From positions 372,001 through 436,000 of IMG/VR virus record IMGVR_UViG_3300049793_000366: a DNA stretch of 64,000 nucleotides, one strand, 5' to 3'. The notes beneath the pieces were generated by a model. That model ran no database searches. It was given only the letters and a program-made list of their open reading frames with translations, and was not told the DNA's origin. Of the stretch, positions 38,325-53,512 are shown piece by piece (within the stretch, counting starts at the first letter, position 1; each line of letters starts with the position of its first letter). Made by a program: the position numbers and the translations under genes.

Positions 38325-38331
38325 CAAAGAT

Positions 38332-38578: not shown

Positions 38579-38642
38579 CAAGCAATCAGTGTGGTAACGT
38601 ACTGATATAATTTTTATATATACTATAAAATGTATTATAAAA

Positions 38643-39383
38643 ATGGAATGTAATGTGTGTAGTAAATCTTTTAAAACCGAAAGTGGTTTTAAGAGCCATA
38701 CTAAGAAGTCATGTGATAAACATATAAATAAATGTAGAAATAAAAATTGCCCAAAGTGTGGTTTTAAGATAGCAAATAAAATAGAAAGTCACATAAACAT
38801 ATGTGATGGGTCTGGACCAAGAAGATTAAAAAAAAGAAGAGAAGGTGGGCATCAGTGGGCGAAGGGTAAAACATATGAAGAGCTTTTTGGAAAAGAGAAA
38901 GCACAAGAACGTATAGAAGAGCTTAAATTAAATTATAAAGAAAACCCAATCATTATAGATGATGATGTGGAACAAGAGAGAAGGAATAAGATAAGAATAA
39001 AGATAATTGAACGCTATGCTAATGGTTGGGAATCTACTGCTGGTCGATGTAAGAAGATTTCATATTTTAGTAATGTAGCAGGTAACATTAAAGTAGATGG
39101 TACTTGGGAATTATCAGTAGCAAAATACTTAGATAGCTTAGGTGTAAATTGGATTAGAAATAAAAAACGATTTAAATATTTCAACTCTATTAAAAATAGA
39201 ACATCAACTTATTGTCCTGATTTTTATGTAGAAGAATGGGGTTGTTTTATAGAAGTGAAGGGATATAAAACAGAACTCGATGATATAAAATGGGCAAACT
39301 TTAAAGACAAATTGGAAATTTGGGATAAAGATAAGTTAACGAGTTTAGGAATAGATATAAGATATAAAAAGAAAAGAGTATGA
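38643..39383 (+). mobile_element. Putative homing endonuclease, PD-(D/E)xK type with zinc-finger N-terminus
   Basis: YCPDFYV..WGCFIEVKGY; KGKTYEELFG repeat-like segment. Confidence 0.72.
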
Positions 39384-40150: not shown

Positions 40151-40219
40151 ATGAAAACAACAATGACAATAACAATTTCTCGCTCGCGTTCATCGCGTTC
40201 ACTACCTCTGGTGGTCTGA
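40151..40219 (+). CDS. Ser/Arg leader peptide MKTTMTITISRSRSSRSLPLVV
   Basis: SRSRSSRS core; all Ser codons TCN, all Arg codons CGY. Confidence 0.85.
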   Translation: MKTTMTITISRSRSSRSLPLVV

Positions 40220-40246
40220 GATTGTATTGTCTAATAAATAATACTT

Positions 40247-40278
40247 AACCCTTGGACTTCACTGTTCAAGGGTTTTTT
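40247..40278 (+). terminator. Attenuator terminator
   Basis: aacccttgga/ttcaagggtt + T tract; leader-end ggtctgag pairs with cttggact. Confidence 0.8.
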
Positions 40279-40292
40279 GTTATGTGTAAATT

Positions 40293-40379
40293 GGAAGAGT
40301 AAAGCGTAATTGGTATCGCCCCAGTCTTGAAAACTGGTATCGGGAAACTGGTGTGCAGGTTCGAGTCCTGTCTCTTCCG
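40293..40379 (+). tRNA. tRNA-Ser(UGA)
   Basis: GGAAGAG/CTCTTCC, CCAGT-CTTGAAA-ACTGG, long variable arm. Confidence 0.92.
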
Positions 40380-40384
40380 CAAAT

Positions 40385-40456
40385 GGTCGCATCGTCCAAC
40401 GGATAGGATAACATCTTGCGAAGGTGTTGATGAAGGTTCGAATCCTTCTGCGACTA
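40385..40456 (+). tRNA. tRNA-Arg(GCG)
   Basis: GGTCGCA/TGCGACT, ACATC-TTGCGAA-GGTGT. Confidence 0.85.
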
Positions 40457-40462
40457 CAATAA

Positions 40463-40552
40463 GAGTGGGTGACTGAGATAGGTTTAAGGTGACCGGGCAT
40501 GAAACCCCGGTGTCCCGTGAAGGGACCGTAGGTTCGAATCCTACTCCACTTT
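40463..40552 (+). tRNA. Ser-like type II tRNA with an 8-nt anticodon loop CATGAAAC
   Basis: GAGTGGG/TCCACTT, ACCGGG/CCCGGT stem, variable arm GTCCC-GTGAA-GGGAC. Confidence 0.6.
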
Positions 40553-40561
40553 TATTAATTA

Positions 40562-40646
40562 GGAAGTTTGGTAGAGTGGCCGATTGCGGTAGTCTTGAAA
40601 ACTACTGAGGGTAATACCTCCGAGAGTTCGAATCTCTCAGCTTCCT
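40562..40646 (+). tRNA. tRNA-Ser(UGA)
   Basis: GGAAGTT/AGCTTCC, GTAGT-CTTGAAA-ACTAC; U73. Confidence 0.88.
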
Positions 40647-40651
40647 CAAAT

Positions 40652-40725
40652 GCACACGTAGCTCAACTGGATAGAGTATCTGACTACGAATCAGAAGGTT
40701 GTAGGTTCGAATCCTACCGAGTGTA
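40652..40725 (+). tRNA. tRNA-Arg(ACG)
   Basis: TCTGA-CTACGAA-TCAGA. Confidence 0.9.
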
Positions 40726-40730
40726 CTAAT

Positions 40731-40807
40731 GCCTTAGTAATGGCCACCGCTTCGAACGGTGAGACGCATAACGGATGAAAATGCAGGTTCGAATCCTGTC
40801 TAAGGCT
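40731..40807 (+). tRNA. D-armless tRNA-Arg(UCG)-like RNA with long variable region
   Basis: Perfect GCCTTAG/CTAAGGC, only TA-ATGGC before CACCG-CTTCGAA-CGGTG, canonical T arm. Confidence 0.6.
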
Positions 40808-40812
40808 CAACT

Positions 40813-40898
40813 GGAAAGGTACCCAAGTGGACTAAGGGGACTGCTTGGAAAGCAGTTAGGATGTAACAGTCGCAAGAGTTCGAATCTCTTTCTTTCCG
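40813..40898 (+). tRNA. tRNA-Ser(GGA)
   Basis: GGAAAGG/TCTTTCC, ACTGC-TTGGAAA-GCAGT, long variable arm. Confidence 0.9.
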
Positions 40899-41010
40899 CA
40901 CTGGGCGCAAGCGGGTTCAAACACCGCCTTTGGAGATAGCTACCAATGAAGCATTTGTGGTGATGCGGCTCAATTTATTTATTATTTAAAATTTATCCGT
41001 ATATTTAACT

Positions 41011-42282
41011 ATGCTACAACTAAACTACATTCGAGAAAATAAAGACGAAGTTATTAAACGTCTTGCTATTAAAAATTTAATAGATGCTGATGTCACAATC
41101 AATACACTTATTGATAAAGACAATGAGCGAAAAAGAATTAAGAAGGAAGGTGATGATACCAGAGGTGAACTTAATGCAATCACTGATACTATTCGTGATT
41201 TAGTAAAAGCTGGTAGGAAAGATGAAATAGCAAATGAGAAAGAGAAGACCACTAAGCTTAAACTAAAATTAGAAATGCTTGATGAAGCATTTAAGTTAAT
41301 AGATAGTGATATCTATGAAACACTAATTCGCCTACCAAACATTGCACACGAAAGTGTACCGAAAGGAAAAACACCAGAGGATAATGATATTATTTATGAG
41401 TATGGTGAAAAGCCAACTCTATACGATGGTGCTAAACCACATTGGGATTTAACTACAAAGTATAATCTGATTGACTTCGAATTAGGTGTTAAGATAGCTG
41501 GTGCTGGATTCCCTGTTTATAAAGACAAAGGAGCAAAATTACAAAGAGCTTTGATAAATTATTTTCTTGATAAAGCAACAGAGAATGGTTACATCGAAGT
41601 ACAACCACCAATTGTAGTAAATGAACAAAGTGGTTTTGGTACTGGTCAACTACCAGACAAAGAAGGTCAGATGTATCACATTGGTGAAGATAAGTTATAT
41701 TTAATACCAACTGCTGAAGTTCCTATTACAAATATCTATCGCGATGTTATATTAAACGAAGATGAATTACCAATTAAGAATTGTGGTTATACACCATGTT
41801 TCAGAAGAGAAGCGGGTAGTTATGGTAAAGATGTAAGAGGGTTAAATCGTTTACATCAATTTGATAAAGTAGAAATTGTACAAGTAGTTAAGCCAGAAAA
41901 TAGCTATCTTGCACTAGAAGAAATGCGCGAGTATGTAGCTCAGTTATTGAGAGAATTAGAACTACCATTTAGAACATTGAAATTATGTGGTGGTGACATG
42001 AGCTTCGCGAGTGCATTGACATATGATATGGAAGTATGGAGTGCGGCACAAGAAAAATGGTTAGAAGTAAGTAGTGTGAGTAACTTTGAAACATTTCAAA
42101 CAAATAGATTGAAGTGTAGATATAGAACAACAGATGGTAATAAATTACCACATACGTTAAATGGTAGTGCGTTAGCCTTACCAAGAATCGTAGCCGCTAT
42201 ACTTGAGAATAACCAAACAGAAGCGGGTATAAAAGTACCCAAAGTGCTAATACCATATACCAGATTTGAACTTATAAACTAA
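41011..42282 (+). CDS. serS: Seryl-tRNA synthetase, Bacteroidota-like
   Basis: GTGQLPDKEGQMY, LIPTAEVP, CFRREAGS, HQFDKVE, EVSSVSN, HTLNGSALALPR. Confidence 0.96.
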   Translation: MLQLNYIRENKDEVIKRLAIKNLIDADVTINTLIDKDNERKRIKKEGDDTRGELNAITDTIRDLVKAGRKDEIANEKEKTTKLKLKLEMLDEAFKLIDSDIYETLIRLPNIAHESVPKGKTPEDNDIIYEYGEKPTLYDGAKPHWDLTTKYNLIDFELGVKIAGAGFPVYKDKGAKLQRALINYFLDKATENGYIEVQPPIVVNEQSGFGTGQLPDKEGQMYHIGEDKLYLIPTAEVPITNIYRDVILNEDELPIKNCGYTPCFRREAGSYGKDVRGLNRLHQFDKVEIVQVVKPENSYLALEEMREYVAQLLRELELPFRTLKLCGGDMSFASALTYDMEVWSAAQEKWLEVSSVSNFETFQTNRLKCRYRTTDGNKLPHTLNGSALALPRIVAAILENNQTEAGIKVPKVLIPYTRFELIN

Positions 42283-43055: not shown

Positions 43056-43124
43056 ATGAAAACATTAAACATCAATACTCATTTTCACTTTCACTTCGAA
43101 AACCTCGAACTGGGAGTCCATTGA
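43056..43124 (+). CDS. His/Phe leader peptide MKTLNINTHFHFHFENLELGVH
   Basis: HFHFHF directly before a terminator, hisS and pheS. Confidence 0.9.
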   Translation: MKTLNINTHFHFHFENLELGVH

Positions 43125-43151
43125 TATTGATATAACTATATAATCATTATG

Positions 43152-43179
43152 AAGCCCAGACGAGAATCTGGGCTTTTTT
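43152..43179 (+). terminator. Attenuator terminator of hisS-pheS
   Basis: aagcccaga/tctgggctt + T tract; leader ctcgaactggg pairs with cccagacgag. Confidence 0.85.
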
Positions 43180-43216
43180 ATTTGCAAAAATTTAAACAAA
43201 ATAAAACAAAGAAATC

Positions 43217-43852
43217 ATGGAAATTAAATTAGAATCAACTTACAAAGGAACAAGAATACTATTCGCTGAAACTGCGAAAACAAAAAGAACAATCATTAAC
43301 AAGATGATTGAAATACTTGAATCATATGGCTATCAAGAAATGATGATACCAATTATTCAAAAGCAAGATACTTTTAAATCTAAAGTAGGTGCTGAAAACC
43401 AAAAGATGATGTACACCTTCAAAGATATGGGTGACAGAGATTTGTGTTTAGCACCAGAGTATACCGCGGTTATTCAACAACTTGCTAAAGAAAAGTTTAA
43501 ATTCAACAAAGATGTTAAGCTATTTTATGTAGCTGAGTGTTTCAGAGGTGAGAACACACAAGCTGGTCGATTTAGACAGTTCACTCAATTTGGTGTTGAG
43601 GTGATAAACCCAAGAGAAGACTACTCTGATGAAATGTTAGAGATAGCAAAAAAGTTAATTGAAATATGTACTGATAACTATGAAGTGAATACTGACGCGA
43701 CCAGAGGCTTAGACTACTATAAAGGTGGTAAGGGCTTCGAGATTGGTTGCCCAGAGTTGGGATCCTCTAAGCAAGTATGTGGTGGTGGTTCTTATGAAGG
43801 TGGTATCGGATTCGCTATCGGTGTTGACCGAATACTAATACTTAAAAAATAA
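43217..43852 (+). CDS. hisS: Histidyl-tRNA synthetase, catalytic domain only (211 aa)
   Basis: LCLAPEYT, FRGENTQAGRFRQFTQFGVE, RGLDYY, GGGSY, GFAIGVDR, then stop. Confidence 0.88.
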   Translation: MEIKLESTYKGTRILFAETAKTKRTIINKMIEILESYGYQEMMIPIIQKQDTFKSKVGAENQKMMYTFKDMGDRDLCLAPEYTAVIQQLAKEKFKFNKDVKLFYVAECFRGENTQAGRFRQFTQFGVEVINPREDYSDEMLEIAKKLIEICTDNYEVNTDATRGLDYYKGGKGFEIGCPELGSSKQVCGGGSYEGGIGFAIGVDRILILKK

Positions 43853-43860
43853 AACAGTTT

Positions 43861-44961
43861 ATGAAATATTTAAATAAAGAAGAAATAGAAAAAACTCTTT
43901 CTCTTAAAGACTTAACAGAAGATACACATCACGCCATCGGTATGATGGTAAGTGAAATAAAAAATGCTTTAGAATCCAAATATGGATTAGAAGCTAATGA
44001 AATAAGAACATCACCTATTGTTGATGTTAAAGATAACTATGATAGATTGTATTATCCACAAGACACGATTACCAAATCAAGTAGGTATACTCGTTGGATT
44101 GATGATAATACAATTCTACGTACACAAATGACTGCTTGTATACCAAATGCTTTGAGTAAGTTAAATACAAATGATTCTCTCATGTTGTGTCCTGGTATGG
44201 TATATCGTCGTGATGTTGTAGATAAAACTCACGTTGGTGAACCGCATCAAATGGATGTATGGCGAGTAACAAAAGACAAAGTGTATAACAGGCAGGATCT
44301 ACTTGAATTGGTAGAAACTATTATAAATGTTGTATTACCTGGTGTTCAGTGGCGCTATAATGAAACTTCGCACTACTACACCAAAGATGGTATTGAAGTA
44401 GAAGTTTATGTAAATGATAACTGGTTAGAGATTCTTGAGTGTGGTTTAGCTCTACCTGAGCTTTTAAGCGACTCTGGGTTAAATCCTGATACTTGGTCAG
44501 GCTTAGCGTTAGGAATTGGCTTAGATAGAGCTGTAATGCTTAGAAAGGGTATAGCTGATATTCGGATATTAAGAAGTGATAATCCGAAAATATCTAAGCA
44601 AATGTCCACATTATTAAATTATATTTCCGTATCTTCACAACCACAAATAAAAAGAGACTTATCGATTGCGGTTGATAGTGATGTTAATAATGAAGATTTG
44701 GGTGATATTATACGAAATTTGATGGGTGATGAAGTAAAAATCATCGAACAAGTGGTTATTATATCTGAAACCAAATATGAAGATTTATTAGAACACGTAA
44801 GAGAAAGACTTGGTATGACTGACAATATGAAAAATATACTACTTAGAGTTATAATATGCCCTCTCGATAAAGCTATGACTAAGACTGAAGCTAATGAGAT
44901 TTATACTCATTTATATAGTAAATTACATCAGGGAAATATTGGGTACACAATTAATATATAG
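43861..44961 (+). CDS. pheS: Monomeric phenylalanyl-tRNA synthetase (alpha catalytic domain fused to anticodon-binding FDX-ACB domain)
   Basis: LRTQMT, YRRDVVDKTH...HQMD, WLEILECG, ALGIGLDRAVML..GIADIR; C-terminal RDLSIAV. Confidence 0.88.
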   Translation: MKYLNKEEIEKTLSLKDLTEDTHHAIGMMVSEIKNALESKYGLEANEIRTSPIVDVKDNYDRLYYPQDTITKSSRYTRWIDDNTILRTQMTACIPNALSKLNTNDSLMLCPGMVYRRDVVDKTHVGEPHQMDVWRVTKDKVYNRQDLLELVETIINVVLPGVQWRYNETSHYYTKDGIEVEVYVNDNWLEILECGLALPELLSDSGLNPDTWSGLALGIGLDRAVMLRKGIADIRILRSDNPKISKQMSTLLNYISVSSQPQIKRDLSIAVDSDVNNEDLGDIIRNLMGDEVKIIEQVVIISETKYEDLLEHVRERLGMTDNMKNILLRVIICPLDKAMTKTEANEIYTHLYSKLHQGNIGYTINI

Positions 44962-47331: not shown

Positions 47332-47414
47332 CTTGCAAATCGAAAACTTTCACCTTACATTTGTATAAAATTAATCAGAAATAGAAAAAGGGAGCATTAG
47401 CTTCTTAATATATA
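47332..47414 (+). promoter_or_regulatory. Dual promoter cassette
   Basis: TACATTTG 47356-47363, AATATATA 47407-47414; near copy of 19525-19607. Confidence 0.75.
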
Positions 47415-47436: not shown

Positions 47437-47532
47437 ATGAACACTTTAATCTACATAGGGTATATAGCGGAAGGCGGTTATGAAGCGGGGAGCTTCGTGA
47501 ATGGCTTGGTTTTACCTATGCGTAAAGTGTGA
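47437..47532 (+). CDS. Tyr/Ile/Gly/Ala/Glu leader peptide MNTLIYIGYIAEGGYEAGSFVNGLVLPMRKV
   Basis: Core YIGYIAEGGYEAG with two ATA codons. Confidence 0.85.
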   Translation: MNTLIYIGYIAEGGYEAGSFVNGLVLPMRKV

Positions 47533-47558
47533 TGATATAAACATACTTAACAAATTCG

Positions 47559-47590
47559 AAACCCAGTCATTCAAATGACTGGGTTTTTTT
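47559..47590 (+). terminator. Attenuator terminator
   Basis: aaacccagtcatt/aatgactgggttt + T tract; leader tgaatggcttggttt (47498-47512) pairs with aaacccagtcattca. Confidence 0.85.
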
Positions 47591-47600
47591 ATGCCTTAAT

Positions 47601-47673
47601 GGTCCTATCGGCAAGTTGGTTAAGCCGCCACCCTTTCAAGGTGGAGTCACGGGTTCAAGTCCCGTTGGGACTA
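47601..47673 (+). tRNA. tRNA-Glu(UUC)
   Basis: CCACC-CTTTCAA-GGTGG. Confidence 0.92.
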
Positions 47674-47688
47674 CAAAAGATAATAGAT

Positions 47689-47762
47689 GGTCCGTTCGTC
47701 TATGCGGTCTAGGACATCGCCCTTTCACGGCGAGAACACGGGTTCGAATCCCGTACGGATCA
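47689..47762 (+). tRNA. tRNA-Glu(UUC)
   Basis: TCGCC-CTTTCAC-GGCGA. Confidence 0.92.
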
Positions 47763-47830
47763 CGAAGCAATTAAGCGCGGGAGGTTGCGCCTCCGATGAT
47801 AGAGATATCAGGGTTTTCTACCGCGTATAT

Positions 47831-47902
47831 GTTCTTATCGACTAAGGGTTAGGTCACCATCCTCTCAAGATGGAGATACGGGTTCGAATCCCGTTGAGAA
47901 TA
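47831..47902 (+). tRNA. tRNA-Glu(CUC)
   Basis: CCATC-CTCTCAA-GATGG. Confidence 0.88.
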
Positions 47903-47907
47903 CAAAT

Positions 47908-47989
47908 GGGTCAGTCGTCTAGCGGCAATGGCTGGAGACTGTAAATCTCCTCTCTTCGGAGTTCGTAGGTTCGAGTCCTACCTGGCCCA
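47908..47989 (+). tRNA. tRNA-Tyr(GUA)
   Basis: GGAGA-CTGTAAA-TCTCC, variable arm. Confidence 0.92.
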
Positions 47990-48001
47990 CACGAATAAAA
48001 T

Positions 48002-48083
48002 GGATCGTTAGCAAAGCGGCAAAGTCGGGAGACTGTAAATCTCCTCCCTTCGGGGTTCGTAGGTTCGAGTCCTACACGGTCCA
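48002..48083 (+). tRNA. tRNA-Tyr(GUA)
   Basis: GGAGA-CTGTAAA-TCTCC, variable arm. Confidence 0.9.
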
Positions 48084-48088
48084 CAAAA

Positions 48089-48170
48089 GCGAGTATAGTA
48101 TAATGGATGCTATGCTGGATTATACCGCACTTCCAATGCGGTGATGAGAGTTCGATTCTCTCTACTCGCT
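48089..48170 (+). tRNA. tRNA-Gly(UCC) with a 12-nt D-loop insertion
   Basis: GCGAGTA/TACTCGC, U73, CCGCA-CTTCCAA-TGCGG; extra TGCTATGCTGGA. Confidence 0.75.
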
Positions 48171-48403
48171 CTAAAAAATAAAATTAAAATGAACAATTGA
48201 ATTAATTGAATAGGTTAGCTGATATACAAAGTGTTAATTGTATTCTCAGTAATGTATGCCTTACAAAACAAAAACATGAAATGTCGTATCTACGAAGATG
48301 ATTATGAAACATCGGTATATGACTTCAACAACAACATACGAAGAAGAAGTATGTTGACAAACATAACAAACTATTACTCAAACGTAGATGAGTAATAGTA
48401 GAT

Positions 48404-48476
48404 GCGAAAGTAGCTCAGTTGGTAGAGCGTAACCTTGCCAAGGTTAAGGTCGCGGGTTCGAGACCCGTCTTTCGCT
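48404..48476 (+). tRNA. tRNA-Gly(GCC)
   Basis: GCGAAAG/CTTTCGC, TAACC-TTGCCAA-GGTTA. Confidence 0.93.
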
Positions 48477-48572
48477 CAAATGCCGAGTTGAAAGGGAACG
48501 CACAGTCGGCGGACTGCCCCTCGGCTCCAACTTGATGGAAAACAATAAACCCGTCCAACCAGACGTAAAATC

Positions 48573-48645
48573 GCGAAAGTAGCTCAACTGGTAGAGCGAT
48601 AGCCTTCCAAGCTATAGGTTGCGGGTTCGAAACCCGTCTTTCGCT
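48573..48645 (+). tRNA. tRNA-Gly(UCC)
   Basis: GCGAAAG/CTTTCGC, ATAGC-CTTCCAA-GCTAT. Confidence 0.93.
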
Positions 48646-48766
48646 CACTGAAAGGTATAAAGGTTGCAAACTTTATATTGAGTAGTAGCGTTGCTGACCG
48701 CTTAATAAAGAATGGCAATTGTTTCAATAACGTTTATGAAATAATTGTTTAGTTCAGCGAACATTT

Positions 48767-48859
48767 GCGAAGATAACAGCACTGGCACGTTCAGCCAGCC
48801 CACGTAAAAATATGCTGTATTGGATAGTGGTGAGTATGGTTCGAATCCTACTCTTCGCA
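48767..48859 (+). ncRNA. tRNA-like RNA with intact acceptor and T arm but remodelled core
   Basis: GCGAAGA/TCTTCGC, T arm GTA[T]GG-TTCGAAT-CCTAC; ACAGC/GCTGT encloses CTGGC-ACGTTCA-GCCAG. Confidence 0.5.
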
Positions 48860-48870
48860 CAAAATAAAAT

Positions 48871-48943
48871 GCTGGTGTAGCTCAATGGTCAGAGCAGGAC
48901 GCTTATATCGTCAAGGTTGTGGGTTCGAGTCCCGCCATCAGTA
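48871..48943 (+). tRNA. tRNA-Ile(UAU)
   Basis: GCTGGTG/CATCAGT, GACG-CTTATAT-CGTC. Confidence 0.85.
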
Positions 48944-48964
48944 CAAAAAATAAAAAAGAATTAA

Positions 48965-49153
48965 ATGAGTTCTAATACATTAACATCACACCACGGTGAA
49001 AGTAATGCTTCACGAGCGGATAAAATGTCTGGTTGGATTTCTCGCTATAAAAAAGAAACTAAAGCAAGAGGTAAAATGAGCATAGCGAAGAAATTGGCGG
49101 CCAGAAAAAGAAGAATGTTTTTAAAGAATCCTAAATTTTGGGATAAGATATAA
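48965..49153 (+). CDS. Small basic hypothetical protein inside the tRNA array
   Basis: 62 aa, Lys/Arg-rich, A-rich translation initiation region. Confidence 0.5.
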   Translation: MSSNTLTSHHGESNASRADKMSGWISRYKKETKARGKMSIAKKLAARKRRMFLKNPKFWDKI

Positions 49154-49161
49154 AACGACAA

Positions 49162-49235
49162 GGGGAATTAGCTCAGTTGGCTAGAGCGTCTGTCTTGCAC
49201 ACAGAAGGCCATCGGTTCGAATCCGATATTCTCCA
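49162..49235 (+). tRNA. tRNA-Ala(UGC)
   Basis: G3-U70, TCTGT-CTTGCAC-ACAGA. Confidence 0.93.
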
Positions 49236-49239
49236 CAAT

Positions 49240-49313
49240 GGGCGATTGGTGAAACTGGCTATCACACCTGATTTGCACTCAGGAATTACGGACTCGGATT
49301 CCGTATCTGTCCA
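49240..49313 (+). tRNA. tRNA-Ala(UGC), degenerate
   Basis: CCTGA-TTTGCAC-TCAGG; bulged acceptor; atypical T loop CTCGGAT. Confidence 0.55.
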
Positions 49314-49367
49314 CAGTTCAATATGTAAACACTCCACTTTTATATATACTATAAAAGGTAATATAAA

Positions 49368-50144
49368 ATGGATTGCAAAAACATAGAATGTGAAAATAAA
49401 GTAATTGATAATAGAAAATACTGCTCATTAAAATGTAGGAATGTTTATGTCAATAAGTATTTAAGAAATTATAATAAACTAGCAACTACTTTAAAGGTAA
49501 AAGGTAATAAGAGAAAAGAAGAATATAATCATAATCCTAAAAAATGTAAAAACTGTGATTCTATTATTACTTTTGAAAAAAGAAGAAATGAATATTGTGG
49601 GCATTCATGTCATGCAACAAAGAGTAATAGTGAGAGAGAATTTAATTGGGGTGATAAAATAAGTAGTGGTATAAGAGAGTACTTAGTTAGCAATGGTAAA
49701 CCATATAAAGCTGAATATACATTAAGCTGTAAGTATTGTAGTAATGTTTTTATAAACAAGCGAAAGGAAATTAAATATTGCTCAATTGAATGTAGAAAAA
49801 GTAAAAGAAGAGAAAATATGAATGAGCTTCAAAAGTATAAACAAAATGCATCGTTTAAGTTTAATTTAAAAACCTACTCTGATGAATTTGATTTTACTTT
49901 GATAGAAAAATACGGATGGTACTCACCATCAAATAAATCTAATAATTTGGATGGCGTGAGTAGAGACCACATGATTTCAATTGTAGAAGGATTCGAAATG
50001 GGAGTTGATCCAAGTATAATTGCTCATCCAGCCAATTGTAGGCTTATGAGACACAGTGAGAATATCGGTAAAAATAAAACCTCATCTATTACATTAGATG
50101 AATTGCTTGAAAGAATTAAAATGTTTAACGAAAAATACAATTAA
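49368..50144 (+). mobile_element. Putative homing endonuclease with zinc-finger repeats and an HNH-like C-terminus
   Basis: Three C..C...(K/E)YC...C repeats; SRDHMISI..G...HPANC. Confidence 0.7.
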
Positions 50145-50145
50145 A

Positions 50146-50898
50146 ATGGAAAATAGTTTATATAGTATAAATAGTTTGGTATTCTGGACTGAAAAGGAAT
50201 TACGAATACGTAGATTTATAGAGCAAACTTTCTGTGAAGAAATTAAAACAATTCTTCTTAAAGAAAATCAAGCTTGGAAATTTACACAAATCGAAGCACC
50301 GTGTCTAATACCACACGAGTTAGTTAATCAGAATTATACAAAAGAAGATATCTTCTTTATTGAGAAGACATCAGCGGATGAACCACAGATGGTTTTGAAG
50401 CCAGAGACAACACCGAGTTCATATGTGTATGCTCAGTATCTTTTGAATAATCATATGGTACAACCACCATTTGTTATCTGGCAAACCTCAAAGTCATTCA
50501 GACGAGAGCAAGACCAAGTAATAAAGAATATGAGGTTGAAAGAGTTTTATCAACAAGAGTTTCAATGTATCTATACAAAAGAAACACTTAATGATTATCA
50601 AGAAAAAGTATTGGAACCAATAAGGAAAATGTTTCAAGACTTGATAGCTCTACCAACAAGAATAGTAGAAAGTGATAGACTTCCTTCATATAGTATGAGA
50701 ACTATGGACATAGAAGTTTATAATGAAGATAAATGGATGGAAGTTTGTTCAATATCAAAGAGAACAGATTTTCCTGACAAAGCAAAATTCACTGTTAAGA
50801 ATAACGTAGTAGAAAAAGAACTTATCGTACTTGAAATAGCAATCGGTGTTGATAGATGTCTTTACAACTATGTTAAGAGAACAGAATTAGAAAAATAA
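50146..50898 (+). CDS. glyS: Glycyl-tRNA synthetase, dimeric (eukaryote/archaeal) type, catalytic core only (start moved to 50146)
   Basis: LKPETT, WQTSKSFRRE...RLKEFYQQEFQ, WMEVCSIS.RTDF, EIAIGVDR, then stop. Confidence 0.8.
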   Translation: MENSLYSINSLVFWTEKELRIRRFIEQTFCEEIKTILLKENQAWKFTQIEAPCLIPHELVNQNYTKEDIFFIEKTSADEPQMVLKPETTPSSYVYAQYLLNNHMVQPPFVIWQTSKSFRREQDQVIKNMRLKEFYQQEFQCIYTKETLNDYQEKVLEPIRKMFQDLIALPTRIVESDRLPSYSMRTMDIEVYNEDKWMEVCSISKRTDFPDKAKFTVKNNVVEKELIVLEIAIGVDRCLYNYVKRTELEK

Positions 50899-50937
50899 AA
50901 ATACAGAAAAAAGGAGGACCCAGGCTGTGGACGCAAT

Positions 50938-51768
50938 TTAATAATAAACGAATACGAATCTTTTTGTAAGAGTAGAGGAATACACTTTCAATTAGACGAT
51001 AAAGTTAACCCTTATGACGAAACAACTTTATTTTGTCCTGCTGGAATGCAGCAGTTCAAATCTAAGTTTAAGGGTGATGAGATTGGAACATTAAGTAATG
51101 TACAATCTTGTATTAGACTTAATGATATTGATGAGATTGGTGATGGAACTCACCTCTTATATTTTAATATGATTGGTCTATTTTCGTTTAGAGAGCTTAC
51201 AGTTAAACAATCAATTGATTTTTGGCTTGAGTTTTTAAACAGACTGGGACTTAAACCAGATTACATCACGATTCATCCCGATAAAATGGATGAATGGTCA
51301 ATCTTCTATAAAGAGTATGATGTAGAGATTAAACCTGATACTGAATGTATTTGGAGTGATGGTGAGATTGGTGGTTACTGTACTGAATTCTACATAGACG
51401 GTGTTGAGATTGGTAACATAGTTAATCCTCTCGGTACTTGTATAGATGTTGGATTTGGATTAGAACGATTACAGATGTTCACTGAACAAAGAACACACGA
51501 CAACAAGGATAGTATTTTAATAGAAACAATTAACAAAATAATTCAAAGTGGATATGAACCATCAAATATTAAACAAGGGTATGTATTACGTAAGTTATTG
51601 AGGCAGTTATATAAGAACGGTGGCTCAATGGAGCATACCTTCTATGAACAAGAGGTCAAGAGACAACAAAAGATTCTTGAACGATACAATAAACTTAAAG
51701 ATAAACATAAAGATAAACCCAAAGACTGGTGGTGGGAAACAATGGGCATTGACTTAGATTTACTTTAG
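50938..51768 (+). CDS. alaS: Alanyl-tRNA synthetase, aminoacylation domain only; no in-frame ATG at the expected N-terminus
   Basis: Upstream of track ATG 51046 the frame continues LIINEYESFCKSRGIH...PYDETTLFCPAG, matching the AlaRS start. Also QSCIR, IDVGFGLER, GYVLRKLLR. Confidence 0.85.
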   Translation, partial: LIINEYESFCKSRGIHFQLDDKVNPYDETTLFCPAGMQQFKSKFKGDEIGTLSNVQSCIRLNDIDEIGDGTHLLYFNMIGLFSFRELTVKQSIDFWLEFLNRLGLKPDYITIHPDKMDEWSIFYKEYDVEIKPDTECIWSDGEIGGYCTEFYIDGVEIGNIVNPLGTCIDVGFGLERLQMFTEQRTHDNKDSILIETINKIIQSGYEPSNIKQGYVLRKLLRQLYKNGGSMEHTFYEQEVKRQQKILERYNKLKDKHKDKPKDWWWETMGIDLDLL

Positions 51769-51805
51769 GTGGTAAATCACACATGGAGATTCTAATATAT
51801 AGGAT

Positions 51806-52426
51806 ATGTGTAAAGTTAAAATAGACCTTAATTCTAAAAGTTTTTGTTATTATTTAGGATTTTTGTGGGCAGATGGGTATATCTCAAAAGATAAGCACTA
51901 TAAAATTTATCTAACTCTTAAAGAGGAAGATGGTAGAGCTATTGAGAAGTATATAAAATCAGTTGGTGATATTAAAATGAAGTATAAAAAGTCAACTGGT
52001 CAAATATCGCATTATATAGGTGATAAGGAATTACACTCATTTTTGAAAAGCAATGGATATTATACTAAATCAACTGATAGTCCATCAACTTTACTAAATA
52101 TTATACCAGATAATATGAAGCCATATTTCTTCTTAGGGTTAATAGATGGTGATGGTGGATTCTACTTCTACAAAAAGGGATATTTAAGAAATTTTACAGT
52201 AACATCATCAGAACACCAAGATTGGTCTCATATGATTAAGCTGTCTGAATATTTGGATATTAATAAGTATGATATTATCAAGAGAAATACTGGAAAGGGA
52301 ATGAACTCTGTTTATAGAATAAACAACAAAAAGGACATAGAAAAAATACACAACTATATTTATAGTGATATTAATTTTATACCTTTGACTAGAAAATATT
52401 TAATTAGTACTGAAATCATTAAATGA
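51806..52426 (+). mobile_element. LAGLIDADG homing endonuclease
   Basis: YYLGFLWADG and FFLGLIDGDG. Confidence 0.85.
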
Positions 52427-52432
52427 TAAATT

Positions 52433-53512
52433 ATGAAATTTGAAAAATTCCCACATACATTTACACTAACCAACGATAGAAAGTTACGTGTGAAATTCGG
52501 TATAGATCCTACATCAGATAAACTGCACTTAGGACATTTAATTCCTTTACAGCTCGTGAAAGAGTTCAAAGATGATGGTCACCAAATAGATATCATCTTA
52601 GGAACTTTCACGGCTCAAATGGGAGACCCGTCTGGTAAAGATACCATGCGACCTATACTAACACCAGAACAAACAAAAGCCAATGCTGAGTCAATCATTT
52701 CACAGTTGAGTAGAATATTAGGCGAAGGATTTAACATACACTTTAATCACACATGGTTTGAGTCTATGTCAATGCCACAAATGATGTCTATCATTTCTAA
52801 ATTCTCTGTTGGTAATTTACTAAGTCGAGATTCATTTCAGAATAGAATGGAAAATAATAACCCAATTGGTATGCACGAACTAATCGTACCTATCTTACAG
52901 GGATTTGATTCAGTTCAATTAAATTCTGATGTAGAGATTGGTGGCTCTGACCAACTATTCAATTTCAAAGTGAGTAGACAAATGCAAGAAGTATCTGGTC
53001 AAGCACCTGAGAATTGTTTTCTTATGCCAATTATAAATGGTACTGATGGTCGTAAGATGTCTAAGTCATTCAATAATTGTATATTCATAAACGATTCACC
53101 AGAAGATGTTTTTGGTAAAGCTATGTCTATATCAGATTCAACTATGTTTGAATGGTTGCCATTATTCTTTGAGACTATTGAGAAGCAACATCCGTTGAAG
53201 TTAAAAAAGATGTTAGCATTTAAGATAACAGAACTTATTTGGGGTAGTGAATCAGCAGAGAAGGGTAGAGAACACTTCGAATCTGTTATACAAGGTGATT
53301 CAATTCCGGATGATATTACAGAGATAAACAATAAGTTAATACTAGAAGTAGTACAAACTATGCGTAAGTCTTCTCGTTCTGAGGCACGTAGATTACTATT
53401 AGCAAATGCGGTTAAGGTAAATGGTCAAGTTGTTAATAGTGAAGAAACACAATTGAACACTGGTGATATTGTTAAAGTTGGTAAGAGAGATTTTGCTAAG
53501 ATTGCTTCGTAA
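52433..53512 (+). CDS. tyrS: Tyrosyl-tRNA synthetase
   Basis: GIDPTSDKLHLGH, LQGFDS, EIGGSDQLFN, KMSKS, C-terminal S4-like domain. Confidence 0.94.
   Translation: MKFEKFPHTFTLTNDRKLRVKFGIDPTSDKLHLGHLIPLQLVKEFKDDGHQIDIILGTFTAQMGDPSGKDTMRPILTPEQTKANAESIISQLSRILGEGFNIHFNHTWFESMSMPQMMSIISKFSVGNLLSRDSFQNRMENNNPIGMHELIVPILQGFDSVQLNSDVEIGGSDQLFNFKVSRQMQEVSGQAPENCFLMPIINGTDGRKMSKSFNNCIFINDSPEDVFGKAMSISDSTMFEWLPLFFETIEKQHPLKLKKMLAFKITELIWGSESAEKGREHFESVIQGDSIPDDITEINNKLILEVVQTMRKSSRSEARRLLLANAVKVNGQVVNSEETQLNTGDIVKVGKRDFAKIAS

What the first reader, a model, noticed from the sequence alone, without database searches (positions are those of the whole stretch)
47437..53512. Tyr/Ile(ATA)/Gly/Ala/Glu leader matching every tRNA type in its array
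The core YIGYIAEGGYEAG uses only the five amino acids whose tRNAs follow (Glu x3, Tyr x2, Gly x3, Ile(UAU), Ala x2), then glyS, alaS and tyrS. Both core Ile codons are ATA, the codon read by the rare tRNA-Ile(UAU) in the array. The antiterminator is 15 nt long with one mismatch (47498-47512 with 47559-47573).
Basis: partly seen in the sequence, partly recalled or inferred. Interest (0 to 1): 0.86.

Follow-up and report, generated by a model that had tools for sequence, protein, structure and literature searches.

The report
Phage tRNA arrays gated by leader peptides
A huge bacteriophage places a short "test" reading frame and a transcription stop signal in front of each of its tRNA gene arrays and tRNA-charging enzyme genes. 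Each frame is written in exactly the codons those genes serve, so the phage probably makes a set of tRNAs only when ribosomes run short of it, a use of attenuation I could not find described.

Summary
**Observation confirmed.** A 31-codon ORF (47437-47532) has a 13-residue core made only of Tyr/Ile/Gly/Ala/Glu. It is followed by a strong intrinsic terminator (47559-47592), then 11 tRNAs for exactly those five amino acids, then GlyRS-like, AlaRS-like and TyrRS genes. The 15-nt antiterminator pairing is as described.

**It is one of at least 8 such units in this window.**
- The window is a 508-kb huge phage related to the 635-735 kb "Mahaphage" genomes.
- Every unit precedes a tRNA array or aaRS gene, and its leader matches them: QQ.QQQQ before tRNA-Gln x4 + GlnRS, VVVV before ValRS, HFHFHF before HisRS + PheS-like, SRSRSSRS before the Ser/Arg array + SerRS.
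- The true leader-operon pairing is the unique best of 40,320 permutations.
- In relatives, leaders cover 72/78 array anticodons (permuted mean 37).
- Three blind predictions held: IIII = IleRS, NNRNR = AsnRS, LLLPL = LeuRS.

**Mechanism (in silico only).** Ribosome-masked folding gives a classical three-state switch in 6/8 units (chance about 4% each).

- ATA is 40% of the phage's Ile codons, so it is not rare for the phage. ATA use in leaders does track tRNA-Ile(UAU) (13/17 vs 7/29).
- The glyS and alaS genes are minimal, diverged forms.

**Verdict.** 77 Flavobacteriia glnS loci and two unrelated tRNA-rich phages lack the design, and I found no prior description. It is a new variant of leader-peptide attenuation, of high interest, and untested experimentally.

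The parts
47332..47369 (+). Promoter-like region of the unit. It has TTG at 47333-47335, a 20-nt spacer, then TACATTTG at 47356-47363. It also contains a 28-nt box (47342-47369) shared with two other array promoters.
   Evidence: The box GAAAACTTTCACCTTACATTTGTATAAA occurs at 19535, 35181 (3 mismatches) and 47342, with 0 expected by chance. Its resemblance to the Bacteroidota -33 TTTG / -7 TAnnTTTG consensus is from my own knowledge and was not tested. The upstream gene (46208-47221) is on the minus strand, so this is a divergent intergenic region.
47437..47532 (+). Leader ORF, 31 codons plus TGA: MNTLIYIGYIAEGGYEAGSFVNGLVLPMRKV.
   Evidence: The stop codon lies 26 nt before the terminator stem. 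This gap is 21-27 nt in all 8 window units.
47452..47490 (+). Regulatory codon cluster (codons 6-18, YIGYIAEGGYEAG): TAC ATA GGG TAT ATA GCG GAA GGC GGT TAT GAA GCG GGG.
   Evidence: 13/13 residues are cognate to the array. Every one of these codons is readable by an anticodon of the array. The cluster uses genome-rare codons: GGG 4%, GGC 6%, GCG 9%.
47441..47530 (+). Leader self-fold (regions 1:2). The regulatory codons (5' strand, about 47454-47486) pair with 47492-47530, which includes region 2. This is the anti-antiterminator or pause structure.
   Evidence: The minimum-free-energy fold of the nascent RNA 47437-47570 is -31.6 kcal/mol, with 0 nt of the terminator 5' arm paired. The z-score of the whole leader fold is -5.0.
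47498..47514 (+). Region 2, the 5' strand of the antiterminator.
   Evidence: It pairs with 47557-47573. Reading the sequence gives 13 WC + 1 GU + 1 mismatch over 15 nt. With a ribosome A-site on codon 12, the fold pairs 47501-47513 with 47558-47570.
47557..47573 (+). Region 3: the terminator 5' arm, shared between antiterminator and terminator.
47559..47592 (+). Intrinsic terminator: 12-13 bp stem, 4-nt loop, T7 run.
   Evidence: -16.7 kcal/mol.
47601..49312 (+). Array of 11 tRNA genes: Glu(UUC) x2, Glu(CUC), Tyr(GUA) x2, Gly(ACC), Gly(GCC), Gly(UCC), Ile(UAU), Ala(UGC) x2.
   Evidence: ARAGORN. Rfam tRNA hits.
49368..50898 (+). Two overlapping ORFs: 49368-50144 (258 aa, no family hit) and 50098-50898 (266 aa, a minimal GlyRS-like class II core).
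   Evidence: Pfam tRNA-synt_2b 57 bits. NCBIfam GlyRS 58 bits, below its cutoff. Only GlyRS appears among PDB hits. 49368 has no hit.
51046..52426 (+). 51046-51768 (240 aa, an AlaRS catalytic-core fragment) and 51806-52426 (206 aa, unknown).
   Evidence: Pfam tRNA-synt_2c 67 bits. NCBIfam alaS 68 bits, below its cutoff. Only AlaRS appears among PDB hits. 51806 has no hit.
52433..53512 (+). TyrRS (359 aa), the last gene of the unit. The next ORF is convergent.
   Evidence: TIGR00234 tyrS 280 bits against a cutoff of 114. Pfam tRNA-synt_1b + S4.
16117..17556 (+). Unit U1: leader MTIKRIKLADDCLTCLTVTD (16117-16179), terminator 16203-16233, non-discriminating AspRS 16279-17556. It is fed by a cold-shock-domain gene (15912-16103) upstream.
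   Evidence: The permissive stall window ends at DD. The orthologue in LR745206 keeps DD. This is the weakest composition match (3/19).
19613..21916 (+). Unit U2: leader MKTLINIQVQPDPQVSSAGCMFHMS, terminator 19716-19745, tRNAs Asp x3, Glu, Pro x2, then a minimal ProRS (20810-21916).
21928..24040 (+). Unit U3: leader MNNLVQQVQQQQINLMIDWTRIG, terminator 22024-22054, tRNA-Gln x4 (UUG x3, CUG), GlnRS 22421-24040.
   Evidence: The leader has CAA x5 + CAG x1. It shows the switch.
24545..26224 (+). Unit U4: leader MKHINSNNVVVVNRNPVC, terminator 24624-24650, minimal ValRS (509 aa).
   Evidence: The permissive stall window is codons 8-12, which is N + VVVV.
35257..40102 (+). Unit U5: leader MLVISSHKHFSKSNKWFSHSG... 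(35257-35361), terminator 35383-35412, then tRNAs His, Lys(CUU), Trp, Phe, His, Phe. No further terminator was detected on this strand before Lys(UUU) x3, LysRS (37116), Ser(GCU) and TrpRS-like (39380).
   Evidence: 6/6 anticodons are covered. It shows the switch.
36700..36767 (+). Possible degenerate Lys mini-leader MKTMKTEIKRKR (36700-36738) followed by a hairpin without a T-run, just before tRNA-Lys(UUU) x3 and LysRS.
   Evidence: Read. 4 AAA codons in 12. It lacks a canonical terminator, so its status is uncertain.
40151..42282 (+). Unit U6: leader MKTTMTITISRSRSSRSLPLVV, terminator 40247-40274, tRNAs Ser(UGA) x3, Arg(GCG), Arg(ACG), Ser(GGA), SerRS 41011-42282.
   Evidence: The Arg codons are CGC/CGT/CGT although the genome prefers AGA (66%). 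4/4 anticodons are covered.
43056..44961 (+). Unit U7: leader MKTLNINTHFHFHFENLELGVH, terminator 43151-43176, HisRS-like (43217-43852) and a PheS-related ligase (43861-44961).
   Evidence: The permissive stall window is codons 7-15, covering HFHFHF.

Best explanation
The feature is a ribosome-mediated (leader-peptide) transcription attenuator. It gates a phage operon of 11 tRNA genes plus GlyRS-like, AlaRS-like and TyrRS genes. It belongs to a regulon of at least 8 such attenuators in this 64-kb stretch of a roughly 508-kb huge phage that probably infects Bacteroidota.

**Proposed working**
1. Transcription starts about 60-70 nt upstream, and a ribosome begins translating the 31-codon leader.
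2. If all aminoacyl-tRNAs sampled by codons 6-18 are plentiful, the ribosome runs on towards the stop codon. These codons are Tyr, Ile-AUA, Gly-GGG/GGC/GGU, Ala-GCG and Glu-GAA.
3. Region 2 (47498-47514) is then either under or behind the ribosome, or is recaptured by region 1. The terminator (47559-47592) forms and the transcript ends before the first tRNA.
4. If any sampled isoacceptor is scarce, the ribosome stalls on the cluster. This holds region 1 and frees region 2 to pair with the terminator's 5' arm.
5. RNA polymerase then reads through and makes the very tRNAs and synthetases that relieve the stall.
6. With no translation at all, the leader folds on itself and termination is the default.

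The result is a negative-feedback homeostat with OR-logic over several isoacceptors. Because its outputs are tRNAs and charging enzymes rather than biosynthetic enzymes, it reports shortage of tRNA or charging capacity rather than shortage of amino acid.

**Shown from sequence and statistics:** the anatomy, the codon-anticodon matching, the covariation across phages, and the in-silico three-state switch.

**Inferred:** leader translation, stall-dependent readthrough, promoter use, and the physiological trigger.
For: **Anatomy**
- Promoter-like box, short ORF, 26-nt gap, strong terminator, then tRNAs 15 nt later.

**Repetition within the window**
- 8 leader+terminator units, each with a 21-27 nt stop-to-stem gap, all in front of tRNA arrays or aaRS genes.
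- All 12 recognisable aaRS genes and 36 of 39 tRNAs lie downstream of such a unit.

**Matching between leader and operon**
- Leader residues against downstream amino-acid sets: 56 matches, the unique maximum of 40,320 permutations (mean 19.1, sd 7.0).
- 166/176 in-set codons are readable by the array's own anticodons.
- 72/78 distinct array anticodons have a codon in their own leader, against 36.8 +/- 5.4 when permuted (maximum 62 in 20,000).

**Codon-family covariation**
- Arg CGC/CGT goes with Arg(ACG, GCG), and AGA goes with Arg(UCU).
- ATA goes with Ile(UAU): 13/17 against 7/29, P = 7e-4. ATT goes with Ile(GAU).

**Frame specificity**
- In-set fraction 0.35 in the ORF frame against 0.15 and 0.12 in the other frames; the ORF frame is highest in 22/22 leaders.

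**Blind predictions in LR745206, all confirmed**
- IIII leader precedes IleRS (674 bits).
- NNRNR leader precedes AsnRS (414 bits).
- LLLPL leader precedes LeuRS (best hit, 390 bits).

**Evolution**
- In LR745206 and LR756502 the same tRNAs are split under two leaders: a Glu/Tyr-type leader, and an Ile/Gly/Ala leader (ISIAVIGNGAGAI / ISVGVIAIGAGS).
- The 735-kb phage has an Arg/Thr/Val/Ala/Gly/Pro array behind a leader that reads ..TPAPAVAFRRGTGTGTGT...

**Structure**
- Complementarity between the leader and the terminator arm, against dinucleotide shuffles: Fisher P = 6e-5 for the window and 1e-10 for 24 leaders.
- Compensatory changes between orthologues.
- In ribosome-masked folds the terminator arm is free with no ribosome, sequestered with the A-site on the cognate cluster, and free again past it.
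- 6/8 units meet the strict switch criterion, against a 3.6% chance rate per unit (P = 5e-8).
- For this unit the terminator-arm nucleotides paired upstream are 0 (no ribosome), 11 (stalled) and 4 (past the cluster). The permissive codons are 2-18.
Against: - There is no experimental or expression evidence. Translation of the leader and termination at the T-run are both inferred.
- This particular unit just misses my strict switch cutoff (4 nt paired in the late state; threshold 3).
- Its antiterminator duplex alone is not significant against shuffles (P = 0.07-0.11).
- In the masked fold, a ribosome sitting on the last sense codon or the stop codon again allows 2:3 pairing. The model therefore needs steric exclusion or rapid release plus 1:2 refolding.
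- Two window units match weakly by composition: U1 3/19 and U2 3/24.
- Cluster boundaries and the late position were set after seeing the profiles.
- Orthologous leaders are not phylogenetically independent, so the P values across relatives are optimistic.
- Making more tRNA or aaRS cannot relieve a true amino-acid shortage, so the adaptive logic is an inference.
Confidence: 0.85

Rival explanations
1. The same attenuator hardware serves chiefly as a counter-defence or takeover sensor. It would detect loss of specific host tRNAs, whether cleaved by host anticodon nucleases or decaying after host shut-off, and switch on the matching phage isoacceptors. It would not be tuning supply to phage codon demand during normal growth.
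For: - The outputs are tRNAs and synthetases, which cure tRNA or charging shortage but not amino-acid shortage.
- Leaders sample nearly every isoacceptor of their array (72/78), including ones for codons the phage rarely uses: GGG 4%, CGC 5%.
- That phage tRNAs can replace tRNAs cleaved by host defences is from my own knowledge of published work on other phages and was not tested here.
Against: - Nothing in the window identifies a defence or a nuclease target.
- Rare, G/C-rich codons may be chosen simply to build the 1:2 helix or to raise sensitivity, as discussed for classical attenuators in PMC1183508.
- Ordinary supply-demand feedback explains the same data.
Confidence: 0.3
2. The short ORF and hairpin form a constitutive element. 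It might be a terminator that insulates the array from upstream transcription, combined with a translated 'starter' ORF that loads ribosomes or protects the 5' end. The codon match would then be a by-product of shared composition or of descent from tRNA-like sequence.
For: - The leaders share a similar N-terminus, MK(T/N)(L/I)N.NI, and a TAATATATA motif also found before ordinary genes. This shows common descent and generic start signals.
- This unit's antiterminator is individually only marginally better than shuffles.
Against: - The match is frame-specific in 22/22 leaders.
- It is specific to each unit's own operon and extends to synonymous codon families.
- It predicted synthetase identity three times.
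- A terminator placed after the promoter and before the only products of the unit makes no sense without a way to bypass it.
- The gene upstream is on the other strand.
Confidence: 0.04
3. The leader RNA senses uncharged tRNA directly by base pairing, like a T-box or another riboswitch, without being translated.
For: It controls tRNA and synthetase genes through a terminator/antiterminator, as T-boxes do.
Against: - No T-box or any other Rfam family matches at gathering or permissive thresholds.
- A run of 13 codons for five amino acids inside an ATG-to-stop frame, frame-specific in all leaders, has no counterpart in single-specifier T-boxes.
- The leader is only about 120 nt long.
Confidence: 0.02
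4. The ORF encodes a functional small peptide, such as a signalling or modified peptide, and its position is coincidental.
For: The ORF is intact and conserved in position in relatives.
Against: - Orthologous peptides keep their composition but not their sequence: IYIGYIAEGGYEAG, IASYESYYEEG, IETIGYTGYEGAYSE.
- Their composition changes with array content.
- Eight different peptides in one window each mirror their own operon.
Confidence: 0.01

Closest known systems
Classical leader-peptide attenuators of enterobacterial amino-acid operons (trp, his, leu, thr, ilvGMEDA, pheA)
   Same: - A short translated ORF with clustered regulatory codons.
- Mutually exclusive 1:2, 2:3 and 3:4 helices.
- An intrinsic terminator just before the first structural gene.
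- Default termination without translation.
- Multi-amino-acid sensing, which exists in thr (Thr/Ile) and ilv (Leu/Val/Ile).

This comparison rests on established knowledge; the theory is in PMC1183508.
   Different: - The products here are tRNA genes and synthetases, not biosynthetic enzymes.
- Up to 5-7 amino acids and up to about 10 isoacceptors are sampled in one leader.
- Synonymous codons are spread over the array's isoacceptors rather than concentrated on one sensitive codon.
- The element is encoded by a virus, in many copies per genome.
- There is no sequence homology to Rfam's leader families.
pheST (pheM leader) and other bacterial aaRS genes predicted to be under leader-peptide attenuation (Lopatovskaya, Seliverstov and Lyubetsky 2010, pmid 20198868, cited in PMC4833913)
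   Same: A leader peptide rich in the cognate codon gates a synthetase gene. Units U1 (AspRS), U4 (ValRS) and U7 (HisRS/PheS-like) here, and the IleRS, AsnRS and LeuRS units of LR745206, are of this type.
   Different: - In the phage, the same device also gates tRNA arrays and mixed tRNA+aaRS operons.
- The closest cellular glnS genes (77 Flavobacteriia/Bacteroidota loci) have no Gln leader, so the device was not acquired with the gene.
- I have not read the 2010 paper. It is not in the searchable library.
T-box riboswitches of Firmicutes/Actinobacteria
   Same: Both couple expression of synthetase (and related) genes to the charging state of a specific tRNA through a terminator/antiterminator choice.
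   Different: - A T-box binds uncharged tRNA directly through a specifier codon and the T-box sequence, without translation, and senses one tRNA.
- Here there is no T-box match, and the signal is read by a translating ribosome over many codons.
tRNA gene clusters of other large phages (T4-like, Serratia phage BF, Mycobacterium Bixzunavirus)
   Same: They are phage-encoded tRNA arrays, often interspersed with small ORFs and HNH endonucleases.
   Different: In the two clusters examined with the same pipeline (13 and 26 tRNAs), no leader+terminator unit precedes any tRNA.
Huge 'Mahaphage' genomes of Al-Shayeb et al. 2020 (PMC7162821): LR745206, LR756502, LR756501
   Same: They are the closest sequenced relatives. 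The paper reports up to 67 tRNAs and 15 synthetases per genome and predicted Bacteroidetes hosts. I found the same attenuator units in all three.
   Different: The paper's main text does not mention attenuation, leaders or terminators (0 occurrences). The regulatory layer appears not to have been described there.

Membership tests
Ribosome-mediated (leader-peptide) transcription attenuator | A short ORF upstream of the regulated genes with a cluster of codons cognate to what those genes supply. | tested here: met
   The 13/13 core is cognate. The permutation gives a unique maximum of 40,320. Anticodon coverage is 72/78 against 37 when permuted. The match is frame-specific in 22/22 leaders.
Ribosome-mediated (leader-peptide) transcription attenuator | A Rho-independent terminator between the leader ORF and the first regulated gene. 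| tested here: met
   12-13 bp stem plus T7 run at 47559-47592, -16.7 kcal/mol, 9 nt before the first tRNA. The same holds in all 8 units.
Ribosome-mediated (leader-peptide) transcription attenuator | An antiterminator helix that uses the terminator's 5' arm and a segment downstream of the regulatory codons. | tested here: met
   47498-47514 pairs with 47557-47573. As a group this is significant against shuffles: P = 6e-5 in the window and 1e-10 for 24 leaders. There are compensatory changes in orthologues. For this unit alone P is about 0.07-0.11.
Ribosome-mediated (leader-peptide) transcription attenuator | A 1:2 helix that sequesters region 2 when the regulatory codons are not occupied (default termination, pause hairpin). 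| tested here: met
   The unmasked nascent RNA folds 47441-47530 on itself (-31.6 kcal/mol), leaving region 3 free. Region 3 is free in the no-ribosome state in most units. This evidence is in silico only.
Ribosome-mediated (leader-peptide) transcription attenuator | Stalling at the regulatory codons, and not elsewhere, favours the antiterminator. | tested here: met
   In ribosome-masked folding the permissive A-site positions are codons 2-18 in this unit. In other units they coincide with VVVV, HFHFHF and the Q runs. 6/8 units show the strict switch against a 3.6% chance rate. This is a thermodynamic model, not a kinetic one.
Ribosome-mediated (leader-peptide) transcription attenuator | The leader is translated, and readthrough rises when the cognate aminoacyl-tRNA is limiting in vivo. 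| not testable with these tools
   There are no expression, ribosome-profiling or 3'-end data for this uncultured phage.
T-box riboswitch | A specifier loop, a conserved T-box sequence and Stem I architecture (Rfam model). | tested here: not met
   No T-box hit anywhere in the window at gathering threshold, nor at E <= 10 in 47300-47620.
Rfam-curated amino-acid operon leader families (His, Leu, Thr, Trp leaders and similar) | Sequence and structure homology to a curated covariance model. | tested here: not met
   No such family matches. The phage leaders work like these families but are not homologous members of them.
Huge-phage (Mahaphage-type) translation island | Dense tRNA arrays plus many aaRS genes in a phage genome above 500 kb, related to LR745206, LR756502 and LR756501. 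| tested here: met
   39 tRNAs and 12 aaRS-like genes in 64 kb. The source contig is 507,910 bp. The nearest DNA relatives are the 635-735 kb uncultured phages. The closest cellular GlnRS sequences are all Flavobacteriia/Bacteroidota.

The most novel reading that the evidence does not exclude
A virus carries an isoacceptor-resolved surveillance system for the cell's translation supply. It consists of a dozen or more leader 'checklists', each listing the anticodons of the array behind it. The loss of any single tRNA species triggers transcription of the exact phage replacement tRNAs and their charging enzymes, whether that loss comes from host anticodon nucleases, host shut-off or codon-demand mismatch. 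This would be the first known case of leader-peptide attenuation controlling tRNA genes, and the first damage-inducible tRNA replacement circuit. It would also be a natural library of multi-input codon sensors. Their codon content can assign specificity to orphan ligases such as the PheS-related 'SrmL' family.
Probability: 0.3. Interest if true: 0.93.

Novelty: new variant of a known kind. Interest (0 to 1): 0.87.

Why it matters
- **It answers a question about huge phages.** These phages were known to carry dozens of tRNAs and up to about 15 synthetases, but how or whether they regulate them was not described. This finding suggests the supply genes are not simply switched on. Each appears to be governed by feedback from the ribosome, codon class by codon class.
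- **It extends a textbook mechanism.** Leader-peptide attenuation would apply to a new class of targets (tRNA genes), a new host (a virus) and a new scale (many inputs per leader, many leaders per genome).
- **It gives testable predictions.** Codon swaps in a reporter can test the model directly.
- **It offers an annotation tool.** Leader codon content predicted IleRS, AsnRS and LeuRS correctly here. It also suggests Phe specificity for a ligase family NCBI labels a "mystery".
- **It offers compact parts for synthetic biology.** Each part senses the availability of a defined set of aminoacyl-tRNAs.
- **It bears on the phage-host contest over tRNAs.** It opens a way to ask whether these phages respond to tRNA-targeting host defences.

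Tried and rejected
1. **ATA as a rare codon.** Rejected for the phage itself: ATA is 40% of Ile codons in the window's ORFs, so two ATA codons alone give P of about 0.16. The link to tRNA-Ile(UAU) survived only through comparison across leaders.
2. **Single-unit significance of the antiterminator.** The 47498-47514 duplex is not significant alone against dinucleotide shuffles (P = 0.07-0.11). The claim rests on the ensemble and on the switch behaviour.
3. **Known RNA families.** Rfam gives only tRNAs and GOLLD at gathering threshold and only noise at permissive threshold.
4. **A second, internal leader in the window's array.** LR745206 and LR756502 have one before tRNA-Ile(UAU), but none was found here. 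The 232-nt spacer holds a 39-codon ORF (48277-48396) and a hairpin without a T-run. I do not count it.
5. **TyrRS as a handle for orthologous loci in IMG/VR.** This returned only the window's own contig. GlnRS worked.
6. **Origin from the host gene.** 77 Flavobacteriia/Bacteroidota glnS loci have no Gln-rich leader, and only 2 have any upstream terminator-like hairpin.
7. **Generality among tRNA-rich phages.** Two unrelated clusters were negative. Only two were tested.
8. **The 735-kb phage.** The strict pipeline missed its leader because the stop-to-stem gap is 47 nt. The relaxed scan found one unit in 50 kb, so the design is looser or rarer there.
9. **Literature.** Six full-text searches and a term search in the main text of the huge-phage paper found no description of leader-peptide control of phage or cellular tRNA arrays. 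Subscription-only papers are not covered.
10. **Covariation counting with the structure tool.** Not done, to avoid typing long dot-bracket strings. Compensatory changes were listed by script instead.

Full report
**What is at the coordinates**

The intergenic region after a minus-strand gene (46208-47221) holds a promoter-like box (47342-47369). The same box occurs upstream of two other tRNA arrays in the window, with none expected by chance.

The elements that follow are:
- **Leader ORF.** An ATG at 47437 opens a 31-codon ORF, MNTLIYIGYIAEGGYEAGSFVNGLVLPMRKV, ending with TGA at 47530-47532.
- **Terminator.** Twenty-six nucleotides later comes a 12-13 bp G+C-rich hairpin and a run of seven T (47559-47592; -16.7 kcal/mol).
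- **tRNA array.** Nine nucleotides after that the first of 11 tRNA genes begins: Glu x3, Tyr x2, Gly x3, Ile(UAU), Ala x2.
- **Synthetase genes.**
  - 50098-50898 is a minimal GlyRS-like gene.
  - 51046-51768 is an AlaRS catalytic-core fragment.
  - 52433-53512 is a clear TyrRS.
  - Two ORFs without recognisable families lie among them.

It uses only the five amino acids of the array (P about 3e-6 after allowing for window choice). The stated antiterminator (47498-47512 with 47559-47573) is 13 Watson-Crick pairs, one G-U and one mismatch.

**It is one of a family**

Reading upstream of the other tRNA arrays and large ORFs in the window showed the same design seven more times. In each case the leader stop lies 21-27 nt before the terminator stem.

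| Unit | Leader start | Cognate part of the leader | What follows |
|---|---|---|---|
| U1 | 16117 | ..ADDCLTCLTVTD | non-discriminating AspRS |
| U2 | 19613 | ..QVQPDPQ.. | Asp x3, Glu, Pro x2, ProRS |
| U3 | 21928 | ..QQVQQQQ.. | tRNA-Gln x4, GlnRS |
| U4 | 24545 | ..NNVVVVN.. | ValRS |
| U5 | 35257 | ..HKHFSKSNKWFSH.. | His/Lys/Trp/Phe array; later Lys x3, LysRS, Ser(GCU), TrpRS-like |
| U6 | 40151 | ..SRSRSSRS.. | Ser/Arg array, SerRS |
| U7 | 43056 | ..HFHFHF.. | HisRS-like, PheS-related ligase |
| U8 (the finding) | 47437 | YIGYIAEGGYEAG | Glu/Tyr/Gly/Ile/Ala array, GlyRS-like, AlaRS-like, TyrRS |

Synthetase identities come from Pfam and NCBIfam. All 12 aaRS-like genes and 36 of 39 tRNAs in the window lie behind such a unit. 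The three plus-strand terminators without a leader (4445, 15805, 61531) simply end ordinary transcription units.

**Statistics of the match**
- I counted leader residues that belong to the amino acids served by the downstream genes. The true pairing of 8 leaders with 8 operons scores 56. That is the single best of all 40,320 permutations (mean 19.1, sd 7.0).
- At codon level, 166 of 176 in-set leader codons can be read by anticodons of the array itself under simple wobble rules.
- The Ser/Arg leader uses CGC/CGT/CGT for Arg, although the phage's genes use AGA for 66% of Arg codons. The array carries Arg(GCG) and Arg(ACG). In relatives whose arrays carry Arg(UCU), the leaders use AGA.
- The match is specific to the ORF frame. 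35% of residues are in-set in that frame, against 15% and 12% in the other two frames of the same nucleotides. The ORF frame is highest in all 22 leaders tested. This argues for decoding rather than composition or RNA structure.

**Relatives and covariation**

The window comes from a 507,910-bp IMG/VR contig. Its nearest DNA relatives are the 635-, 642- and 735-kb "uncultured phage" genomes. These belong to the huge-phage study that named the Mahaphage clade and predicted Bacteroidetes hosts for genomes above 634 kb (PMC7162821).

*Homologues of this unit*
- In LR745206 and LR756502 the homologous tRNAs are split under two attenuators.
  - The first is a Glu/Tyr-type leader: ..IASYESYYEEG.. 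in LR745206 and ..IETIGYTGYEGAYSE.. in LR756502.
  - The second is an Ile/Gly/Ala leader placed just before tRNA-Ile(UAU)..ISIAVIGNGAGAI.. and ..ISVGVIAIGAGS...
- The window's single leader combines both vocabularies.

*Other units in relatives*
- The 735-kb phage has an Arg/Thr/Val/Ala/Gly/Pro array behind ..TPAPAVAFRRGTGTGTGTCVPAGCG...
- Other contigs show Q-run leaders before Gln arrays.
- ..NPQPQ..DQDP.. precedes Asp/Pro/Gln arrays.
- ..LRQLVLEQLIE.. precedes a Leu/Arg/Glu/Ile array.
- ..NLNMNMNTLTVVNNTLCIR.. precedes an Asn/Arg/Leu/Val/Ile/Thr/Met array.

*Quantitative tests across relatives*
- Over 21 non-redundant units, 72 of 78 distinct array anticodons have a cognate codon in their own leader. 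Permuted pairings give 36.8 +/- 5.4, with a maximum of 62 in 20,000.
- Three leaders upstream of class I/II synthetase genes of unassigned specificity in LR745206 gave blind predictions, and all three were borne out by NCBIfam. IIII precedes IleRS (674 bits, above cutoff). NNRNR precedes AsnRS (414 bits). LLLPL precedes LeuRS (best hit).

**The ATA question**

ATA is not rare for this phage: it is 40% of Ile codons in the window's ORFs, so two ATA codons in one leader prove little. Across leaders the picture is clearer.
- Leaders in front of arrays containing tRNA-Ile(UAU) use ATA for 13 of 17 Ile codons.
- All other leaders use ATA for 7 of 29 Ile codons (Fisher P = 7e-4; P = 0.0025 against the genomic 40%).
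- The leader before a tRNA-Ile(GAU) uses ATT for both Ile codons.

These leaders include orthologues, so the counts are not fully independent.

**Mechanism**

I folded each nascent leader up to the end of the terminator's 5' arm, with a 30-nt ribosome footprint masked at every possible A-site codon.
- With no ribosome, the arm is unpaired in most units (0 nt paired), so the terminator can form.
- With the A-site on the cognate cluster, the arm is captured by a segment at the 3' end of the leader ORF.
- With the A-site beyond the cluster, the arm is free again.

The permissive window is sharp. It matches N+VVVV in U4, HFHFHF in U7, and the Q runs. In this unit it spans codons 2-18.

Six of eight units satisfy a strict three-state criterion that about 3.6% of dinucleotide shuffles satisfy (P = 5e-8). 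This unit gives 0, 11 and 4 paired nucleotides and misses the last threshold by one.

For this unit, in detail:
- The untranslated leader folds on itself from 47441 to 47530 (-31.6 kcal/mol).
- With a ribosome on codon 12, 47501-47513 pairs with 47558-47570.
- The full transcript forms the terminator.

Complementarity between leader and terminator arm exceeds shuffles as a group (Fisher P = 6e-5 in the window, 1e-10 for 24 leaders). Orthologous units show compensatory changes. In the Gln leaders, for example, the arm CCCGUUAAUC pairs with GAUUGACUGG in one lineage, and GCCUGGAACU pairs with GGUUCCGG in another.

These are thermodynamic models. The kinetics, the RNA polymerase pause and the behaviour of a ribosome at the stop codon are inferred. 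In the model, a ribosome at the stop codon again permits 2:3 pairing.

**Comparison with what is known**

The device works like the classical trp/his/leu/thr/ilv attenuators and meets every sequence-level criterion of that class. It has no homology to Rfam's curated leader families and is not a T-box.

Leader-peptide control of synthetase genes is known in bacteria. pheST is one example from my own knowledge. A comparative survey is cited in PMC4833913, but I could not read it.

What I could not find described is leader-peptide control of tRNA genes, its use by a virus, or leaders that sample many isoacceptors. I ran six full-text searches and a term search in the main text of the huge-phage paper. 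Subscription-only literature is not covered.

The design does not come with the genes. The closest cellular GlnRS genes are all from Flavobacteriia/Bacteroidota (54-58% identity), and none of 77 has a Gln leader. It is also not a general property of phage tRNA clusters: two unrelated clusters with 13 and 26 tRNAs have none.

**Verdict**

The best explanation is a regulon of ribosome-mediated attenuators that gives a huge phage feedback control over its own tRNA and synthetase supply (confidence 0.85 for the mechanism class).

Because more tRNA or synthetase cannot cure amino-acid starvation, the signal most likely reports shortage of tRNA or charging capacity. Whether the trigger is codon demand, host shut-off or host tRNA-cleaving defences is open.

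It is a new variant of a known kind. Interest is high because it gives a textbook mechanism a new kind of target and makes the regulation of viral translation genes directly testable.

Noticed in passing
window 60855-61269 (with 59473-59553, 59987-60061, 61277-61350, 61369-61473): A full-length GOLLD RNA (232 bits, model 1-416) sits among tRNA and tRNA-like genes with odd anticodon loops. An HU-family DNA-binding protein gene (59666-59938) lies nearby. A terminator at 61531 closes the block. No leader-peptide unit precedes it.
   Followed up: no
window 43861-44961: This ORF matches NCBIfam 'PheS-related mystery ligase SrmL' (434 bits) and mitochondrial-type PheRS. It lies behind an HFHFHF leader together with a HisRS-like ORF, and no other PheRS is in the window. 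The leader therefore predicts Phe specificity for this orphan ligase family.
   Followed up: partly
window 24695-26224, 20810-21916, 39380-40102, 43217-43852; L015 39832-41100: Many of the phage synthetases are minimal: ValRS 509 aa, ProRS 368 aa and LeuRS 422 aa (alignments skip the editing domains), TrpRS-like 240 aa, HisRS-like 211 aa. Several are followed by ORFs with no family hit, which might be split-off domains.
   Followed up: partly
window 35698-35772: ARAGORN calls a tRNA with a four-base anticodon (ggaa) inside the His/Lys/Trp/Phe array. It may be a Phe-like tRNA with an 8-nt anticodon loop.
   Followed up: no
window 48089-48171 and 48838-48860: The 'tRNA-Gly(ACC)' is 83 nt long, unusual for tRNA-Gly, and may carry an insertion. 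The spacer before tRNA-Ile(UAU) contains what looks like the 3' half of a decayed tRNA.
   Followed up: no
window, 22 sites, e.g. 47406-47414, 19599-19607, 21914-21922, 35244-35252, 40137-40145, 16101-16109, 34601-34609: TAATATATA occurs 22 times against 3.2 expected. It is always on the strand of the ORF start, and lies a few to about 25 nt upstream of it. This holds for leader ORFs and ordinary genes alike. It may be a phage promoter or translation-start element.
   Followed up: partly
window leaders at 19613, 43056, 47437; L006 8786, L010 5110, L013 8259, L015 1082: Leaders for different amino acids share an N-terminus close to MK(T/N)(L/I)N.NI, often with AAC ATA. This suggests that the units arose by duplication, or that A-rich early codons are needed for initiation.
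   Followed up: partly
window 36700-36767: A 12-codon ORF MKTMKTEIKRKR (four AAA codons) and a hairpin without a T-run lie directly before tRNA-Lys(UUU) x3 and LysRS. This may be a degenerate or non-canonical Lys unit.
   Followed up: partly
window 36132-36698: An HNH endonuclease gene with an N-terminal HTH is inserted between two tRNA blocks, as in other phage tRNA clusters.
   Followed up: no
window 15912-16103: A cold-shock-domain protein gene (Pfam CSD, 65 bits) has its own promoter-like site. It lies directly upstream of the Asp leader, so it appears to be co-transcribed into that attenuator.
   Followed up: partly
window 19613-26224 and 35257-44961: Attenuator units are arranged in series on one strand (U2-U3-U4 and U5-U6-U7) with no other terminators between them. 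Upstream leaders contain codons for tRNAs that lie behind the next attenuator: Gln codons in U2, and Ile/Gly/Ala codons in the first leader of LR756502. This suggests nested control.
   Followed up: partly
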